NCBI RefSeq assembly: GCF_022045235.1 | Contig: NW_027266272.1 | Span: forward strand, 7,750,001-7,814,000 | DNA: 64,000 nt | Source: Haliotis cracherodii | Taxonomy: Eukaryota | Reading direction: 5' to 3' | Notes under the pieces: generated by a model | What the model was told of the DNA's origin: nothing | Database searches by the model: none | The model's input: the letters and a program-made list of their open reading frames with translations, nothing else | In this document: positions 23,222 to 30,661 of the stretch, one piece after another | Numbering within the stretch: the stretch's first letter is position 1 | How the letters are laid out: each line of letters opens with the position of its first letter | Position numbers and translations under genes: made by a program

Positions 23222-23498
23222 ATGATCGGAACACTCGTGTCGTCTGCCGTCCTCCTGGCGCTTGCCGTCTACTCCGAGGCTGCATCACTTCCGGTGGTGC
23301 CAGTTGCTGTTGCAGTTGACGAATGTGTGTATCAAAATAAGACTTATAAGATTGGTGAACGGACCGACAACGCGTGCATGCCCTGCACGTGCACGCAAGG
23401 TGGCCGTATGTCTTGCTTATCTATCGACTGTTTCTTTCCTTCTATCTGCGTCGACCCTATTCGGAAGCCGGGGCACTGCTGTCAGACATGTCCAAACG
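23222..23498 (+). CDS. VWC exon-1 cassette (locus 5): signal peptide + VWC domain; no private exon 2 found
   Basis: MIGTLVSSAVLLALAVYSEA signal peptide, intact 10-Cys VWC ending CCQTCPNG, phase-1 donor G|GTATGT. Confidence 0.88.
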
Positions 23499-23939
23499 GT
23501 ATGTATCCCCACATATTTCTGTCCAGATACCATGTTCAACTTTATAGACTGTATGTTTGGCTGCTTCTTATACCGACCTGACGGTTTGAAATGGTGTTGA
23601 TAAAGTCTTGATACTATTCTTTATAAAATTTTACATTTGCTTTTGGAGGTCTGCAAAGTTGTGATTATTATGAAATAGGTATGAAAGAGTGTTTATGCAA
23701 GTTTGATATTTGTTTTCGTAACATTGTTCAAGACAGACCTGACCTTAAATCATTCCATACGATGAAAAACATTTAGGACAAACCTTCGTTATCTGTGCTT
23801 TGTTAGCTGTCTTTTAAAGTACCATGTGTTACTGTCACTGAAGATCTATTTGAAACAACCTTATACACGAGTTCAACTTCAAACTAGTTATTTAAAAATG
23901 TTTAAAAATAAACTACGGGTATTTTTGTGACTATTTCTA

Positions 23940-25502
23940 AACTACGGGGCCAAAGAAAGTTTTCACCGACTTTACTTGACCAAACGCCAAAAACAAAGGC
24001 ATATGTGAGATTTATGATGATTAATTTATAAACAAAAATCATTTTCCATGAATTAGAATGAAAATGCATTGTAATGCCAATATTGCATTCTCCGCAATAC
24101 ACAAAGAAAGAGTCAAGGGGTCCAAATTAAAAATTACACAAATCAGAGTTCATTGAAAAAGTGCATGAAGAGTCCATTGATGACACAGTAGTCAGGTAAC
24201 ACGTCATCAATAGCGAATGTGACCACCCTGGGCATCCATGCACGCCAACATACGCCTCCTCATTGACGTCGTCCGTCGACGAATAACGTCAACGGGAATC
24301 CTGTTCCATAAGTTCAATAGAGTCTGTTCAAGTTCCTGTCGGTTCGCTGGAGGCGGTACATGTTGTCTCAGCTGACGATCAAGATGATCCCAGAGATGTT
24401 TATTGGGGTTCATGTCTGGAGAACAAGGTGGCCAGGGCAATACGTTGACGTTAACGTTGTTCAGGTAGTCTTGAACAATTCGGGCGGTGTGAGGCCTTGT
24501 GTTGTCTTGTTGCAAAGTTAATCCTCTTGGCTGATGTTGAATAAAGGGCACCACAACAGGTCTCAACACTTCATTCCTGTATCGCTGAACATTCAGGTTT
24601 CCTCGGATGATAACCAGCCGTGTTGTAATCTGGCCTCAAATGCCACCGCAATCCATGACGCCTCCACCTCCTAACGGGTGAACTTCTCTAATGCAGTTTG
24701 GCGTCAGTCGCTCTCCCCTTCGTCGAAAAACTCGAATTCTGCCATCGTTCCTGAACAGACAGAACTGACTTTCATCTGTAAAAGCACTCTCGCCTAGTCA
24801 CGTCGCTGCCACCGACGTACGGTTCGTGCCCGTTGCAGTCTGCGTTGACGGTGTAGACGGATCAAGGCCATTACACGGAAGGGTCGGTATGCTCGTATAC
24901 CAGCCGTACGAAGTCGTCGAAGGACCGTTTGTCTGCTGTTGGCATGCCCTAGTGCTGATACGCCGTTGACGTCGCCGTCACACATCGTCACACGCCGTTT
25001 CCGAGGTGAATCTGCCGGATGTAGCGGTCTTCGGCCGGTGTTGTCACTCTCGGTCTTTCCGATCTTGCCCGGTCTTGAGTCTGTCCTGTCTGTTGGTAGC
25101 GGATTATCAACTTGCTGATGGTGGTCTGGGAGCAGTTGAAGGTTCTGGCTATCTGACGTTGAGTAGCCCCCATATTGGCCATACCGATCGCTCTGTCTCG
25201 TTGCGCTTGTGTAAGTCTGGGCATATTCCTTTGTGGTTTTTTTGCTTTCTGAATGCCTGCTCTGTCCAACGTCGGTATTTATGCCACAATCACGCACGTG
25301 CATTTTGACCAATGTCTCAAAATCACGTTTTGCACGTTTTCAACAATGCATGATTTGGAGAGCTGCGTTCGAAAATCTGCGTTGTGGTTGTGGTCATGTT
25401 GCATTTGGGCGAATGTTTTCTACGGGGGTTCAAACCTGTACCATCTCTTTTGCTTTTTATACAACTATTTTTAAAGTGAAAACTTTCTTTCGCCCGGTAG
25501 TT
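23940..25502 (-). mobile_element. Near full-length Tc1 element, inactive
   Basis: TA-flanked ~27-bp TIRs (aactacggggccaaagaaagttttcac / gtgaaaactttctttcgcccggtagtt). HTH N-terminus MPRLTQAQRDRAIGM; FTDES, QQDNTRPH and SPDMNPNKHLW (catalytic E replaced by K); frameshifts and stops. Confidence 0.92.
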
Positions 25503-25870
25503 TACAAAGTGATCCCTACAATTGAAGATGGTATGTTGATTTCCAAGAACACGACTTTGTTGAGTAAAAGCAGTGCAATCAAAACACAACATTGTGCGAG
25601 TGGGTGATTAAGGGTAGTTCTCACGTTGCTATTGGTAGCAACGACTTGCAGTTGCGAATGAGTTGCATCGTCCGTACCACCAACATGTTGCAACCGTATT
25701 GGTAAGAACTTTTTGCAAGCAATCCACCAATTAAAGCACCAGAGTTACCATACGTGGTTTATGGTGTCAGTCATGTCAGAAAATATGGTGAGGTGAGGTG
25801 AAATGGGGTTTAACGTCACTTCCTAGATTGTTGCACTTTTATAGCGACGTACGCGTGTGTGTTTGTGTGG

Positions 25871-27600: not shown

Positions 27601-27754
27601 AGCCATAAAATAATGGCTGTGTTAGTACACCTAATTCAAACTATCTGATCTAGATAAGGTCACATGTTTTCGATCTATATCACAAGAGAAATTTATAGAT
27701 AAGAAAGCGATATAAATGTAACGTCTCAACACTATCTCTCACTTCTCGCTCACA

Positions 27755-28025
27755 ATGATCGGAACAGTCGTCTCGTCTGCCGTACTCCTGGCTCTTGTCG
27801 TTTACTCCGAGTCTGCATCACTTCCGGTGGTGGCAGTTGCAGTTGACAAATGTGTCCATCAAAACAAGACGTACATGGTTGGTGAAAAGACCGAGAGCGC
27901 GTGTATGCCCTGCGAGTGCACGCCTAGCGGCCGTATGGCCTGCATGGTTATTGATTGTTTCTTCGCCCCTCCATGTGTCGACCATGTGACGAAGCCGGGG
28001 CAGTGCTGTGCGACTTGTCCAAACG
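27755..28025 (+). CDS. VWC exon-1 cassette (locus 6), close paralog of locus 5; no private exon 2 found
   Basis: MIGTVVSSAVLLALVVYSES signal peptide, intact 10-Cys VWC ending CCATCPNG, phase-1 donor G|GTATTT (unspliced read-through stops at 28033). Confidence 0.88.
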
Positions 28026-29352
28026 GTATTTAACCACTTATTTCTGTCAAGATATCGTGTTCTACTTCATAGACTGGAGGGCGGTCAGTTGGCCTAGTTG
28101 TTAAAACGTTCGCTCGTCACGCTGAAGACCCGGGTTCGATTCCCGACATTGGTACAATGTGTGAAGCCCATTTCTGGTGTCCCCCGCCGTGATGTTGTTG
28201 GAATATTGCTAGAAGCGGCGTAAAACCATACTCACTCACTCACTTATAGACAGGAAGTTATAGAATGGTTGTGTGATAAAGCTGCTACAATTAATAATGC
28301 TTTGAAATAGTGTTGACGCATAGTTTTGAAGAACGCATTTGGTCGTGATAATTATTTTCTCAAATCAAACCGTCGTGATTTGTGCTTTGTCAGCCATAAT
28401 TACAGATTTCAATAATGCCAATCAAGCAGTTAGTTATAAATGTGTGTGGTATATTGCTGGAATTGATGGAATTAGTGGCGTAAAACTATATTCACTCACT
28501 CTCTATGAAGTGTTGCATTGATGTCCTCTCATACGGCTATGCCAGAACTGTAAGCAGTGCTTAGCTCTTCACTTGATGGTGAACATGGTCTTATACCTTC
28601 ACAAGAATTGGCAATCATTTGGTCATATGTCATTGTGACGGCCAATACATATTGCGAAATTACGCACAGATCAGTATTATTCACCCGTATGGTACTTGTT
28701 GTTACCATGTCTGGTGCTCGGCATTAAGGGGCTGAAACAAGGACTGGTCGGCTTAGAGTCAGTATACTGTGTCTGAGTGGGGTATTCAATTCAACCTGCG
28801 TCTCTTTAGACGTCTTTTGGTTTGCCGTGGCCGGGGATCAAACCCAGACCTTCCGCTCTCCGGGCGAACGCTTTACCACTAGACGACGGAGGCGGTCTAG
28901 TCACATTCAAGAGAAATTATTGAAGAAATTATAGATAAAACTGTATTATCCCCTACACGATACACTATTACACCAGAATATGTCGGTCCCTGACAACAGT
29001 AGCGATAGATGAGTTAAGACAGTTTCGTGATAAATTCCACACCACAAGACCACAGATCCATAGTTCAAATCCATTTTCGGGAGCGGTTGCAAATATAATT
29101 AACAATTCATATTTTAATTAACATAGCATGTTAAATGAACATTGATAGTTTTTAAGAGTAGAATTCTCAGGTGTTGGCATAATCTATATAAAGTGTTGTT
29201 TAGTGTTGTGTACAAAAAACGTAAAAAACGTATGTCGAACAGTTTGAAGCCACATGTTACTTCCAGCCATTCCTCTATCTTATCTGCTTTAATATAGGTC
29301 ACGTGACCAATCCTGTTCTCGTGGGTTGTTAGTCCGGCAGCAAGTTTCAGTC

Positions 29353-30661
29353 ATGCTGTTTTTTTCTATCCATCTGCTTCCTTCCACTGTTGACTAGTGA
29401 GGCTGCTTCCATAGCAACCAATAATGACATTTGCGTCATTGGAAACAAAACGTATCATGCGGGAGAGGCCATTAGTGACAACCCCTGTAGACCATGCAGG
29501 TGCGGAGGGGGTAATGCCATCTCCTGTATGATAGTGGACTGTGCCATGCCTATGTGTGTGGATCCTACCAGAAAGGATGGCCAGTGTTGTCAGTATTGCC
29601 CCAATGGTAAGAAATATTGTCAAGGATCCGTTTCCATCTCGTGATAGGGCTGTCATCCCCACGTTCTCGGGTTTCGCCAAATGATGCATGTCATCGTATC
29701 CCAATTGCTTGGATCGATGCTCATGATGTCAATCACTGGATTGTGTGGTCCAGACCCGATTATTTACAGACCGCTCATATAGCTGGAATATTGCTGAGTG
29801 CGGCGTTAAACAACAACCAACCAACCAACCAAATGGGCAATCGTCAACGACCTGCTAGACTTTCTCACATAGTAAGCTGTGACGCCGGGAGGTAACAATA
29901 TTGCTGTTTTAAGGAGTATTTTACTAAATGTAGATTCTTGTGACAGAAAATGTCAAGATCAATTTGGTTGATTACTTGAAGTTGTCATCGGACGTTCTTT
30001 TAAAACTATAAAATGCGTTATTTAAACCTCCTGAATTACATCACATTGCATTGTTTTCTCGACAAGATTCGGAACATTTAGATTTCAAACTCCGAAAAAC
30101 ATACCTTGTTCCTGTTCACTGTCATTTTGAATATACAGTAAACTACGGTTATAACGAACACTCTTATAACGAACTGACGGATCTAACGAATTTATTTTTT
30201 TGTCTCGGCCATTTGCTGTATATATGCTGTATGGATGCTCATAACGAACTACGGTTATAACGAACTAAAATTCGCCGTCCCTTTGAGTTCGTTTTAACCG
30301 TAGTTTACTGTGCCGTTAGATGACGCCAATGGAGACTTTAACGCCTGAACAGGGTCTTGTCATTCGACGTTTGAACAAGAACAAATACAATCTTAAACCC
30401 CTTCTACCCACCCACTTCGAAGAATGGCAGGTTACGACGATTATTGCATGGGGTTGGCCATGTGTGTAGGGCCATGTAGTCTATCCGATCTGTACTGTCT
30501 ATGTCTGTGTTGCAGGAAGGAACTGCAAGTATGGCGATCACATTATCAAGGAGGGGGAAACGTACAAGCCAGACGCTAAGACCGAGTGTAAATGCAACAC
30601 CCACGTATTCGGGATGGCCTCCCTGAAAGCTGTGTGTGCCACGACTGCCACCATCGCCTAA
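29353..30661 (+). CDS. VWC2/Brorin-like gene (locus 7); exons 29353-29606, 30516-30661; +1 frameshift in a T7 run in the signal peptide as assembled
   Basis: Removing one T at 29359-29365 gives MLFFLSICFLPLLTSEA + 10-Cys VWC ending CCQYCPNG; donor G|GTAAGA; acceptor tgtgttgcag|; exon 2 GRNCKYGDHIIKEGETYKPDAKTECKC...AVCATTATIA*; AATAAA at 30678. Confidence 0.82.

What the first reader, a model, noticed from the sequence alone, without database searches (positions are those of the whole stretch)
23222..30661. Three promoter + exon-1 cassettes but one exon 2: a variable/constant gene architecture
Seen: exon-1 cassettes at 23222, 27755 and 29353 each carry their own ATG, signal peptide, VWC domain and phase-1 donor. 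By eye I find no GxNC..CxC..AxC exon between them; the only exon 2 and its polyA signal are at 30516-30683. All three donors join this exon in frame. Cassettes 5 and 6 also share ~150 bp of upstream DNA. Established: clustered protocadherins and UGT1A use variable first exons spliced to constant exons. Inference: promoter choice could yield three different N-terminal VWC domains on one constant C-terminal module.
Basis: partly seen in the sequence, partly recalled or inferred. Interest (0 to 1): 0.85.

Follow-up and report, generated by a model that had tools for sequence, protein, structure and literature searches.

The report
Three first exons sharing one exon 2
In an abalone cluster of small secreted VWC-domain protein genes, three first exons lie upstream of a single second exon, and at least two of them are spliced onto it in abalones. 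It is a small invertebrate example of a known layout (several first exons, one shared downstream exon), and public gene models already partly show it.

Summary
The observation largely holds. Three homologous exon-1 cassettes lie at 23222, 27755 and 29353. A profile search of the window and a whole-genome search find only one exon 2, at 30516-30661.

One claim fails. In cassette 7 the ATG at 29353 is out of frame with its VWC domain, because of a 7-T run. Relatives have 6 or 9 T.

- **Cassette 6 to exon 2:** the RefSeq protein XP_071101928.1 (Haliotis cracherodii) equals this join residue for residue. Transcript contigs from two coded runs carry the GT..AG joint 28025→30516.
- **Cassettes 6 and 7 sharing exon 2:** H. 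rufescens isoforms X1 and X2 carry the cassette-6 and cassette-7 exon types on an identical exon 2.
- **H. rubra:** four isoforms combine three first exons with two second exons.
- **Cassette 5:** it is intact and under constraint (dN/dS 0.35). A cassette-5-type exon is expressed and spliced to an exon-2 homologue in a relative. No junction was seen for this genome, and no cassette-5 protein was retrieved from the protein database.

Protocadherin-like exclusive promoter choice was not tested. I classify this as a new member of a known kind, of moderate interest. The scan had not reported it on other DNA.

The parts
23095..23221 (+). Block just upstream of cassette 5, shared with cassette 6. 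It contains a TATA-like ATAAATG about 35 bp before the ATG.
   Evidence: Self-blastn 23095-23551 vs 27628-28076, 78% identity. Global alignment of the upstream part gives 76%.
23222..23498 (+). Cassette 5 exon 1 coding part: signal peptide plus VWC domain, with a phase-1 GT donor after 23498.
   Evidence: Translation is open. Pfam VWC2L_2nd 28.6 bits. dN/dS 0.35 against cassette 6. 38-50% of its 31-letter words are held by 20 transcriptome-like runs.
23934..25508 (-). Degenerate Tc1/mariner transposon inside the interval between cassettes 5 and 6.
   Evidence: Inverted ends 23934-23966 and 25508-25476. Broken ORFs match DDE_3 and a paired-type HTH domain.
25870..26196 (-). Second fragment of the same transposon family.
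   Evidence: 97.6% identical to 24427-24753.
27628..27754 (+). Block just upstream of cassette 6, homologous to the one upstream of cassette 5.
27755..28025 (+). Cassette 6 exon 1 coding part: signal peptide plus VWC domain, with a phase-1 donor.
   Evidence: Translation. Identical to residues 1-91 of RefSeq protein P0003. Run X2 has a contig over 27803-28026 with 4 differences.
28079..28244 (+). SINE inserted 53 bp into the intron after cassette 6. It interrupts the homology between cassettes 5 and 6.
   Evidence: 92% identical to 22235-22401. Very high depth in RNA contigs.
29321..29606 (+). Cassette 7 exon 1. ATG at 29353; the 7-T run at 29359-29365 shifts the frame; the VWC frame runs 29366-29606; phase-1 donor.
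   Evidence: Translations. Run X5 has a contig over 29321-29607 with one T fewer. Orthologues P0007 and P0008.
30516..30661 (+). The single exon 2: 47 residues with 4 cysteines, similar to the VWC2L C-terminal domain, ending in a stop codon.
   Evidence: Translation. Pfam PF23331 21.8 bits, below its cut-off of 27. Unique in the window and in the genome. Joint from 28024/5.
30678..30683 (+). AATAAA polyadenylation signal.
   Evidence: Contigs of the runs cover up to about 30681.

Best explanation
The window most likely comes from the black abalone Haliotis cracherodii.

**The cluster.** It holds about 11 two-exon genes for small secreted proteins found across molluscs. Exon 1 encodes the signal peptide and a complete VWC domain. 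Exon 2 encodes a 4-cysteine module of about 45 residues. The intron always sits in phase 1 after the motif CPN-G.

**The sub-locus 23.1-30.7 kb.** Here three first exons lie upstream of one second exon.
- Shown: cassette 6 is spliced across cassette 7 onto exon 2 at 30516.
- Shown in sister species: cassette 7 uses the same exon 2. In this assembly cassette 7 carries a one-base frameshift in a T run whose length varies between species.
- Inferred: cassette 5 is also transcribed from its own promoter and spliced over 7 kb onto the same exon. This would give a second protein with a different VWC domain on the same tail.

**Origin (inferred).** A tandem duplication copied the promoter, exon 1 and about 300 bp of intron. 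An exon 2 that H. rubra appears to keep was lost or never copied. Transposon and SINE insertions followed.

**Protein function (inferred from family only).** An extracellular binder or modulator of the VWC type.
For: - **Cassette map.** 11 exon 1s against 8 exon 2s, with none between 23499 and 29352. The family is confined to this window in the 1.18 Gb genome.
- **Cassette 6 in this species.** P0003 (XP_071101928.1, H. cracherodii) equals cassette-6 exon 1 plus exon 2 exactly.
- **Shared exon 2 in H. rufescens.** X1 (P0001) is the cassette-6 type and X2 (P0008) is the cassette-7 type. Their exon 2 is identical.
- **H. rubra.** Isoforms X1-X4 of what is named as one gene combine 3 first exons with 2 second exons.
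- **Spliced contigs.** A GT..AG joint 28024→30515 (cut +1) is present in runs X1 and X2. Loose letters before 30515 in X2 equal the end of the cassette-6 exon. Unique intron bins have almost no depth.
- **Cassette 5 in relatives.**
  - The X1 contig carries all four cassette-5-specific letters at 27793-27812.
  - X1 shows cassette-5-type loose letters before 27991.
  - X1 has no coverage of cassette-6-specific positions 27865-27985, yet it carries the joint into exon 2.
  - In X2 the joint contig reaches 21 letters into exon 2 and a second contig seems to start 10 letters before the exon end. A 31-mer assembly graph would give this if two exon 1s differing at position -11 (the last difference between cassettes 5 and 6) feed one exon 2. 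This last point is inference.
- **Constraint on cassette 5.** dS 0.48, dN 0.165, all ten cysteines kept.
- **Domain and fold.** Pfam VWC. Model pLDDT about 90 over residues 31-135, best structural match the collagen IIA VWC domain.
Against: - No read or contig from this species was available, so nothing shows 23498→30516 in this genome.
- The laid stretch could not include cassette 5 because of the 6000-letter limit.
- No cassette-5-type protein was retrieved from the protein database for H. cracherodii, H. rufescens or H. rubra.
- In run X1 the exon 2 joined to the cassette-5-type exon differs from the window's exon 2 by 7 substitutions and a 6-base deletion, all in its 3' half. It could be a private exon 2 in that species.
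- A cassette-5 transcript must pass 3 AATAAA and 4 ATTAAA hexamers and two downstream promoters. The path from cassette 6 has none of these hexamers.
- The run kinds are guesses and the organisms are coded.
- Whether the RefSeq models rest on RNA evidence could not be checked.
Confidence: 0.72

Rival explanations
1. Only cassettes 6 and 7 are alternative first exons. Cassette 5 is an orphaned first exon, the remnant of a gene whose exon 2 was lost. In this species it is silent, or it makes unspliced or prematurely polyadenylated transcripts, and it has not yet decayed.
For: - No cassette-5 protein model was retrieved for any species.
- The distance to exon 2 is 7 kb, with a transposon and 7 poly(A)-type hexamers in between.
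- The exon 2 used by the cassette-5-type exon in run X1 is a diverged variant and may be private to that species.
Against: - The ORF is intact at dS 0.48 with dN/dS 0.35, and all cysteines, the donor and the promoter block are conserved.
- Cassette-5 words occur in 20 transcriptome-like runs from 14 studies.
- The pattern of contig ends in X2, whose exon 2 is nearly identical to the window's, fits a second cassette-5-like exon feeding the same exon 2.
Confidence: 0.25
2. The locus is a true protocadherin/UGT1A-style diversity system. Promoter choice is regulated and mutually exclusive, so that single cells display one of several VWC domains on a constant module.
For: - The layout is the same: tandem first exons, each apparently with its own promoter and donor, and one downstream exon.
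- In the runs laid, single samples show mainly one cassette type. X1 shows only cassette-5 type. In X2 only cassette-6-type contigs mapped on the laid stretch (it also holds 50% of cassette-5 words). X5 shows cassette-7 type.
Against: - There are only three cassettes, and one is broken here.
- H. rubra has two exon 2s.
- The other eight complete genes of the cluster keep one exon 1 with one exon 2.
- Exon 2 is not more conserved than exon 1 between species.
- There are no single-cell data and no data on regulatory elements.
- The runs are from different organisms and unknown tissues.
Confidence: 0.1
3. The missing exon 2s are an assembly artefact: collapsed or deleted sequence, or cassettes 5 and 6 being haplotype copies.
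For: The interval is rich in repeats: a transposon, a second transposon fragment and several SINEs.
Against: - There is no gap in the region.
- Cassettes 5 and 6 are only 78-81% identical, far too diverged to be alleles.
- RefSeq models in two species, and spliced contigs, join cassette 6 directly to 30516.
- No stray exon 2 exists elsewhere in the genome.
Confidence: 0.03

Closest known systems
[quoted passage not shown]
   Same: Homologous first exons lie in tandem. Each has its own upstream region and 5' splice site and no acceptor, and each encodes the N-terminal domain. They are spliced to shared downstream exon(s). Evolution is by birth and death, with species-specific exon gain and loss and with broken cassettes.
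   Different: There are only three cassettes and a single 47-residue constant exon. The gene encodes a small secreted protein, not an enzyme or receptor. The sister species H. rubra keeps two second exons. No evidence exists on promoter choice. The constant exon evolves at least as fast as the variable ones. Li & Wu describe the organisation of the clusters they studied (Ugt1, Gcnt2, Ugt2a) as vertebrate-specific; this locus is in a mollusc.
VWC2 / VWC2L (brorin, brorin-like) and chordin-like proteins, the names NCBI gives these abalone proteins
   Same: They are secreted and cysteine-rich. Pfam VWC and VWC2L_2nd match exon 1, and VWC2L_C matches exon 2 over 40 of 42 profile positions. The predicted fold matches the collagen IIA and CCN3 VWC domains.
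   Different: The protein is much shorter (about 130-140 residues, one VWC). The exon-2 match is below Pfam's cut-off (21.8 vs 27 bits). The family is a mollusc-wide expansion. Orthology to vertebrate brorin and binding to BMP were not tested.
Arthropod single-VWC (SVWC / Vago-like) proteins (reviewed in PMC13115929; abstract seen only)
   Same: They are small secreted proteins built around one VWC domain, present as multigene families.
   Different: The families were not compared here. The abalone proteins have a 10-cysteine VWC plus a 4-cysteine C-terminal module. Any immune role is speculation.
Ordinary tandem two-exon paralogues in the same window (for example 8361/9461, 11303/12245, 32819/31743)
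   Same: Same protein family, same intron position and same phase.
   Different: Each of those genes has its own exon 2, 552-1802 bp downstream of its exon 1. Cassettes 5 and 6 have none, and would need introns of 7017 and 2490 bp.

Membership tests
Multiple-variable-first-exon cluster (UGT1A / protocadherin type) | A tandem array of homologous first exons that encode the N-terminal part of the protein | tested here: met
   Three cassettes at 23222, 27755 and 29353, 44-72% identical at the protein level. Cassette 7 is frameshifted in this assembly.
Multiple-variable-first-exon cluster (UGT1A / protocadherin type) | A single set of downstream constant exon(s), with no private downstream exons | tested here: met
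   The exon-2 profile finds none in 23499-29352. The genome search finds no other copy. Non-homologous private exons are not excluded for cassette 5.
Multiple-variable-first-exon cluster (UGT1A / protocadherin type) | Each variable exon is actually spliced to the constant exon | tested here: inconclusive
   Cassette 6: yes (P0003 exact match; joints). Cassette 7: yes in relatives (P0008, P0007). Cassette 5: only indirect evidence from relatives.
Multiple-variable-first-exon cluster (UGT1A / protocadherin type) | Each variable exon has its own promoter | tested here: inconclusive
   A conserved 127-bp upstream block with a TATA-like motif precedes cassettes 5 and 6. A cassette-7 contig starts at 29321, about 25 bp after a TATA-like motif. 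Transcription start sites were not mapped.
Multiple-variable-first-exon cluster (UGT1A / protocadherin type) | Regulated or mutually exclusive promoter choice | not testable with these tools
   Needs single-cell or tissue-resolved RNA data from this species.
VWC (von Willebrand factor type C) domain proteins | A ten-cysteine VWC domain with the C2xxC3xC4 and C8C9xxC10 motifs and the VWC fold | tested here: met
   Pfam PF00093 at 29.5-38 bits, above the 27.6 cut-off. The cysteines are invariant in a 31-sequence alignment. The model matches 5nir (collagen IIA VWC) with TM-score 0.77 normalised to the target and rmsd 1.9 Å.
VWC2/VWC2L (brorin) orthologues | Brorin-type architecture including the VWC2L C-terminal domain above threshold | tested here: inconclusive
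   PF23331 gives 17.6-21.8 bits against a cut-off of 27, and PF23334 gives 26-41 bits. There is one VWC only, and the protein is about 135 residues long.

The most novel reading that the evidence does not exclude
The arrangement may be conserved in abalones, since H. rubra, H. rufescens and H. cracherodii all show shared second exons. If so, it would be a true invertebrate counterpart of the vertebrate variable/constant first-exon clusters. Separately regulated promoters would place interchangeable, fast-diversifying VWC binding domains on a common C-terminal module. New cassettes would be born and lost (5 and 6 duplicated, 7 frameshifted), as in UGT1A.
Probability: 0.2. Interest if true: 0.6.

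Novelty: new member of a known kind. Interest (0 to 1): 0.4.

Why it matters
Clusters of variable first exons are best known from vertebrates (UGT1A, GCNT2, protocadherins), where they turn one locus into a family of proteins with different binding domains.

This locus is a small, recently formed example in a mollusc. Its ordinary two-exon paralogues lie beside it, and a sister species seems to keep an intermediate state with three first exons and two second exons. Together these show how such an architecture can arise from plain tandem gene duplication plus loss or non-duplication of the 3' exon.

There is also a practical point for annotation. Cassette 5 is an intact, constrained first exon, yet no protein model for it was retrieved. 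Cassette 7 may be wrongly dropped or wrongly kept depending on a homopolymer of variable length.

The biological role of the proteins is unknown.

Tried and rejected
- The gene order in H. rubra and H. rufescens therefore could not be read and is inferred from isoform names and sequences only.
- A joined cassette-5 plus exon-2 model was not searched. Exons were searched separately by reference.
- **Hidden or decayed exon 2.** tblastn with a short word size, a profile HMM over all six frames, self-blastn for intron or 3'-UTR remnants and a whole-genome search were all negative.
- **Sequencing runs.** No run labelled RNA, and none clearly from the window's own species, was returned. The four runs laid are relatives, with exon identities of 92-98%.
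- **Depths.** Contig depths were not used to rank exons, as the tool warns against it.
- **Solved structures by sequence.** Only chance-level hits, E>0.08.
- **Literature.** Searches for abalone VWC2-like or brorin-like proteins found nothing specific.
- **Earlier findings.** Nothing on this family elsewhere.
- **Rfam.** Only a tRNA-like SINE head at 28823-28893.
- **Assembly-artefact and allele explanations.** Rejected: no gaps, and about 20% divergence between cassettes 5 and 6.

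
Full report
**What the region is**

The window is a eukaryotic, repeat-rich sequence with a single N run, at 55351-55480.

Translating the three proposed cassettes gives the following.
- Cassette 5 (23222-23498) and cassette 6 (27755-28025) are open reading frames. Each has a hydrophobic, signal-peptide-like start (judged by eye) and ten cysteines, and each ends at a GT donor.
- Exon 2 (30516-30661) encodes 47 residues and a stop codon.

tblastn with these pieces shows a family of 11 exon-1 copies, one of them a decayed remnant at 21542-21397 on the minus strand. 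It also shows 8 exon-2 copies spread over 8-42 kb of the window on both strands. A search of the whole genome (1.18 Gb, 80 contigs; the window is C9:7750001-7814000) finds close relatives of exon 1 only inside this window, apart from two weak VWC-like hits on other contigs (C23, C12). It finds no other exon 2 like the one at 30516.

**Checking the observation**

I built a profile HMM from 11 exon-2 peptides: the eight in the window plus three from H. rubra proteins. Run against all six-frame fragments of the window, it recovers exactly the eight known exon 2s (E from 1e-19 to 1e-24). Nothing better than E>2 lies between 23499 and 29352.

All family introns lie in phase 1 after CPN/D-G. The donors are:
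- cassette 5: ..CCAAACG|gtatgt
- cassette 6: ..CCAAACG|gtattt
- cassette 7: ..CCCAATG|gtaaga

The acceptor is ttgcag|GAAGGAAC, so all three join in frame. The implied introns are 909, 2490 and 7017 bp for cassettes 7, 6 and 5. The ordinary paralogues have introns of 552-1802 bp.

Cassettes 5 and 6 share 459 bp at 78% identity (23095-23551 vs 27628-28076). The shared stretch starts 127 bp upstream of the ATG and runs 53 bp into the intron. Weak similarity continues to about 23807 and 28394, beyond a SINE inserted at 28079-28244.

The ATG of cassette 7 at 29353 reads MLFFSIHLLPSTVD-stop, and the VWC domain is in the +1 frame starting at 29366. The cause is a run of 7 T at 29359-29365.

**What lies between the cassettes**

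- A degenerate Tc1/mariner element on the minus strand occupies 23934-25508. It has inverted ends, and its broken ORFs match DDE_3 and a paired-type HTH domain.
- A second fragment of the same family lies at 25870-26196.
- Copies of two SINE families lie at 26597-26799, 27330-27601, 28079-28244, 29682-29833 and 30747-30996.
- A tRNA-like SINE head lies at 28823-28893.
- No remnant of an exon 2 or its 3' UTR is detectable.

**Public protein models**

Cassette-5 exon 1 retrieves two clusters of abalone proteins.
- **H. cracherodii.** P0003 (XP_071101928.1, 'chordin-like protein 1', 138 aa) is identical, residue for residue, to cassette-6 exon 1 joined to exon 2 at 30516. This identifies the likely species. 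It also shows that NCBI's annotation of this genome already skips cassette 7 to make that join.
- **H. rufescens.** Two proteins are named as isoforms X1 and X2. X1 (P0001) has a cassette-6-type first exon. X2 (P0008) has a cassette-7-type first exon. Their exon-2 peptides are identical.
- **H. rubra.** Isoforms X1-X4 combine two cassette-5/6-like first exons and one cassette-7-like first exon with two different second exons, as E+a, Y+b, E+b and c7+a. Here E and Y are my labels for the two cassette-5/6-like first exons, c7 is the cassette-7-like one, and a and b are the two second exons.
- I infer that shared second exons and splicing across an intervening first exon are general at this locus in abalones. 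I also infer that an intermediate state with two second exons exists in H. rubra.
- No cassette-5-type protein was retrieved for any species.

The orthologues also explain cassette 7. H. rubra starts MLFFLS (6 T) and H. rufescens starts MLFFFLS (9 T). Both are in frame, whereas the window's 7 T is not.

**Transcript evidence**

The 31-letter words of cassette-5 exon 1 are held at 38-50% by 20 small, transcriptome-like runs from 9 coded organisms and 14 studies. None reaches about 100% and none is on record as RNA. I read these as related abalone species.

Four of these runs were laid on 24720-30719 at 88% likeness. The 6000-letter limit excluded cassette 5 from the stretch. The results:

1. 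**The runs behave as RNA.** Unique intron bins have almost no depth, exons have hundreds to thousands, and SINEs have huge depth.
2. **Cassette 6 joins exon 2.** A GT..AG joint 28024→30515 (cut +1, that is 28025→30516) is present in X1 and X2.
   - In X2 the loose letters before 30515 are the last bases of cassette 6.
   - A 225-nt X2 contig covers 27803-28026 with four differences, all at third codon positions.
3. **X1 expresses a cassette-5-type exon spliced to an exon-2 homologue.**
   - X1 carries no cassette-6-type exon: depth is 0 at 27865-27985.
   - It has a contig with all four cassette-5-specific letters at 27793, 27798, 27802 and 27812.
   - It has cassette-5-type loose letters (encoding ..CVDPIR) before 27991.
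   - It still shows the joint into exon 2.
   - That exon 2 differs from the window's by 7 substitutions and a 6-base deletion. All of these lie in its 3' half, while the 5' half is identical. It may therefore be a separate, partly homogenised copy.
4. **X2 shows a pattern that fits two exon 1s feeding one exon 2.** Its exon 2 is nearly identical to the window's.
   - The joint contig extends 21 letters into exon 2.
   - The two loose ends before 30515 have a median length of 11 letters, with a 13-letter consensus. That implies lengths of 13 and about 9.
   - A 31-mer assembly graph would break at these points if two exon 1s that differ last at position -11 feed one exon 2. Position -11 is the last difference between cassettes 5 and 6.
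   - This is inference, not observation.
5. **X5 expresses a cassette-7-type exon with an intact frame.** It has a cassette-7 contig over 29321-29607 with one T fewer at 29359. This restores the frame, suggests a transcript start near 29321, and confirms use of the donor at 29606.

**Constraint and protein**

Cassette 5 against cassette 6 gives dS 0.48, dN 0.165 and dN/dS 0.35, and all ten cysteines are kept. Cassette 5 has therefore not been drifting as a dead exon.

Between species, the 'constant' exon is not the slower part:

| Comparison | Cassette-6 exon 1 | Cassette-7 exon 1 | Exon 2 |
|---|---|---|---|
| H. rufescens vs window | 88/90 | not computed | 44/47 |
| H. rubra vs window | 74-75/90 | 76/80 | 31-33/44 |

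Domain and fold evidence:
- Pfam assigns exon 1 to VWC (PF00093) and VWC2L_2nd (PF23334).
- Exon 2 matches VWC2L_C (PF23331) below threshold.
- An AlphaFold model built from a 31-sequence alignment is confident over residues 31-135. Its exon-1 part matches the collagen IIA VWC crystal structure, with TM-score 0.77 normalised to the target.
- The exon boundary falls between the VWC domain and a separate β-rich module, so swapping exon 1 should give folded proteins (inference).
- The family has 181 representatives at E≤1e-3 and is found in gastropods, bivalves and a chiton.

**Reading**

- **Shown:** three cassettes and one exon 2; cassette 6 is joined to it; cassette 7 is joined to it in relatives.
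- **Inferred:** cassette 5 joins it too. I put this at about 55-60% for this genome.
- **Not tested:** promoter exclusivity and protein function.
- **Origin:** best explained by a partial tandem duplication (promoter, exon 1 and the start of the intron) and/or loss of a second exon, followed by repeat insertions.

The layout is the multiple-variable-first-exon kind described for UGT1, GCNT2 and the protocadherins (PMC1885805), here in miniature and in a mollusc. Because RefSeq already models the isoforms, and because the system has only three cassettes with one broken, I rate it as a new member of a known kind with moderate interest.

Noticed in passing
window 29359-29365: The T run just after the cassette-7 ATG varies in length between abalones: 6 in H. 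rubra and in the organism of run X5, 9 in H. rufescens, and 7 here (out of frame). It acts as a homopolymer on/off switch, or it is an assembly error.
   Followed up: partly
window 30596-30657: In runs X1 and X3 the exon-2 homologue is identical to the window over its first 77 bases. Its 3' half carries 7 substitutions and a 6-base in-frame deletion. This mosaic suggests gene conversion between exon-2 copies, or a fast-evolving C-terminal tail.
   Followed up: partly
window 21397-21542 (-): A decayed exon-1 remnant of the same family, with stops and only partial similarity. A possible faint exon-2 trace lies at 21187-21267 (E 0.4).
   Followed up: no
window 31612-36702 (-): Exon 2 of the three minus-strand genes (31743, 33930, 36702) is identical or differs by one residue, while their exon 1s are diverged.
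   Followed up: partly
window 28026-30515: No AATAAA or ATTAAA hexamer occurs on the + strand anywhere between the cassette-6 donor and exon 2 (2490 bp). The interval from cassette 5 to cassette 6 has seven. This may be chance, or selection against premature polyadenylation of the cassette-6 transcript.
   Followed up: no
window 27330-27601, 28079-28244, 29682-29833, 30747-30996: Two SINE families in this region reach very high depth in the transcriptome contigs of all the abalone runs laid (summed contig depths of 1e5-1e6). A tRNA-like head lies at 28823-28893.
   Followed up: no
proteins P0009 (Physella acuta, 585 aa) and P0010 (Liolophura sinensis, 333 aa): In other molluscs the same VWC-plus-tail unit occurs 3-5 times within one annotated protein. 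These are either true multi-unit proteins or gene models fused across tandem arrays.
   Followed up: no
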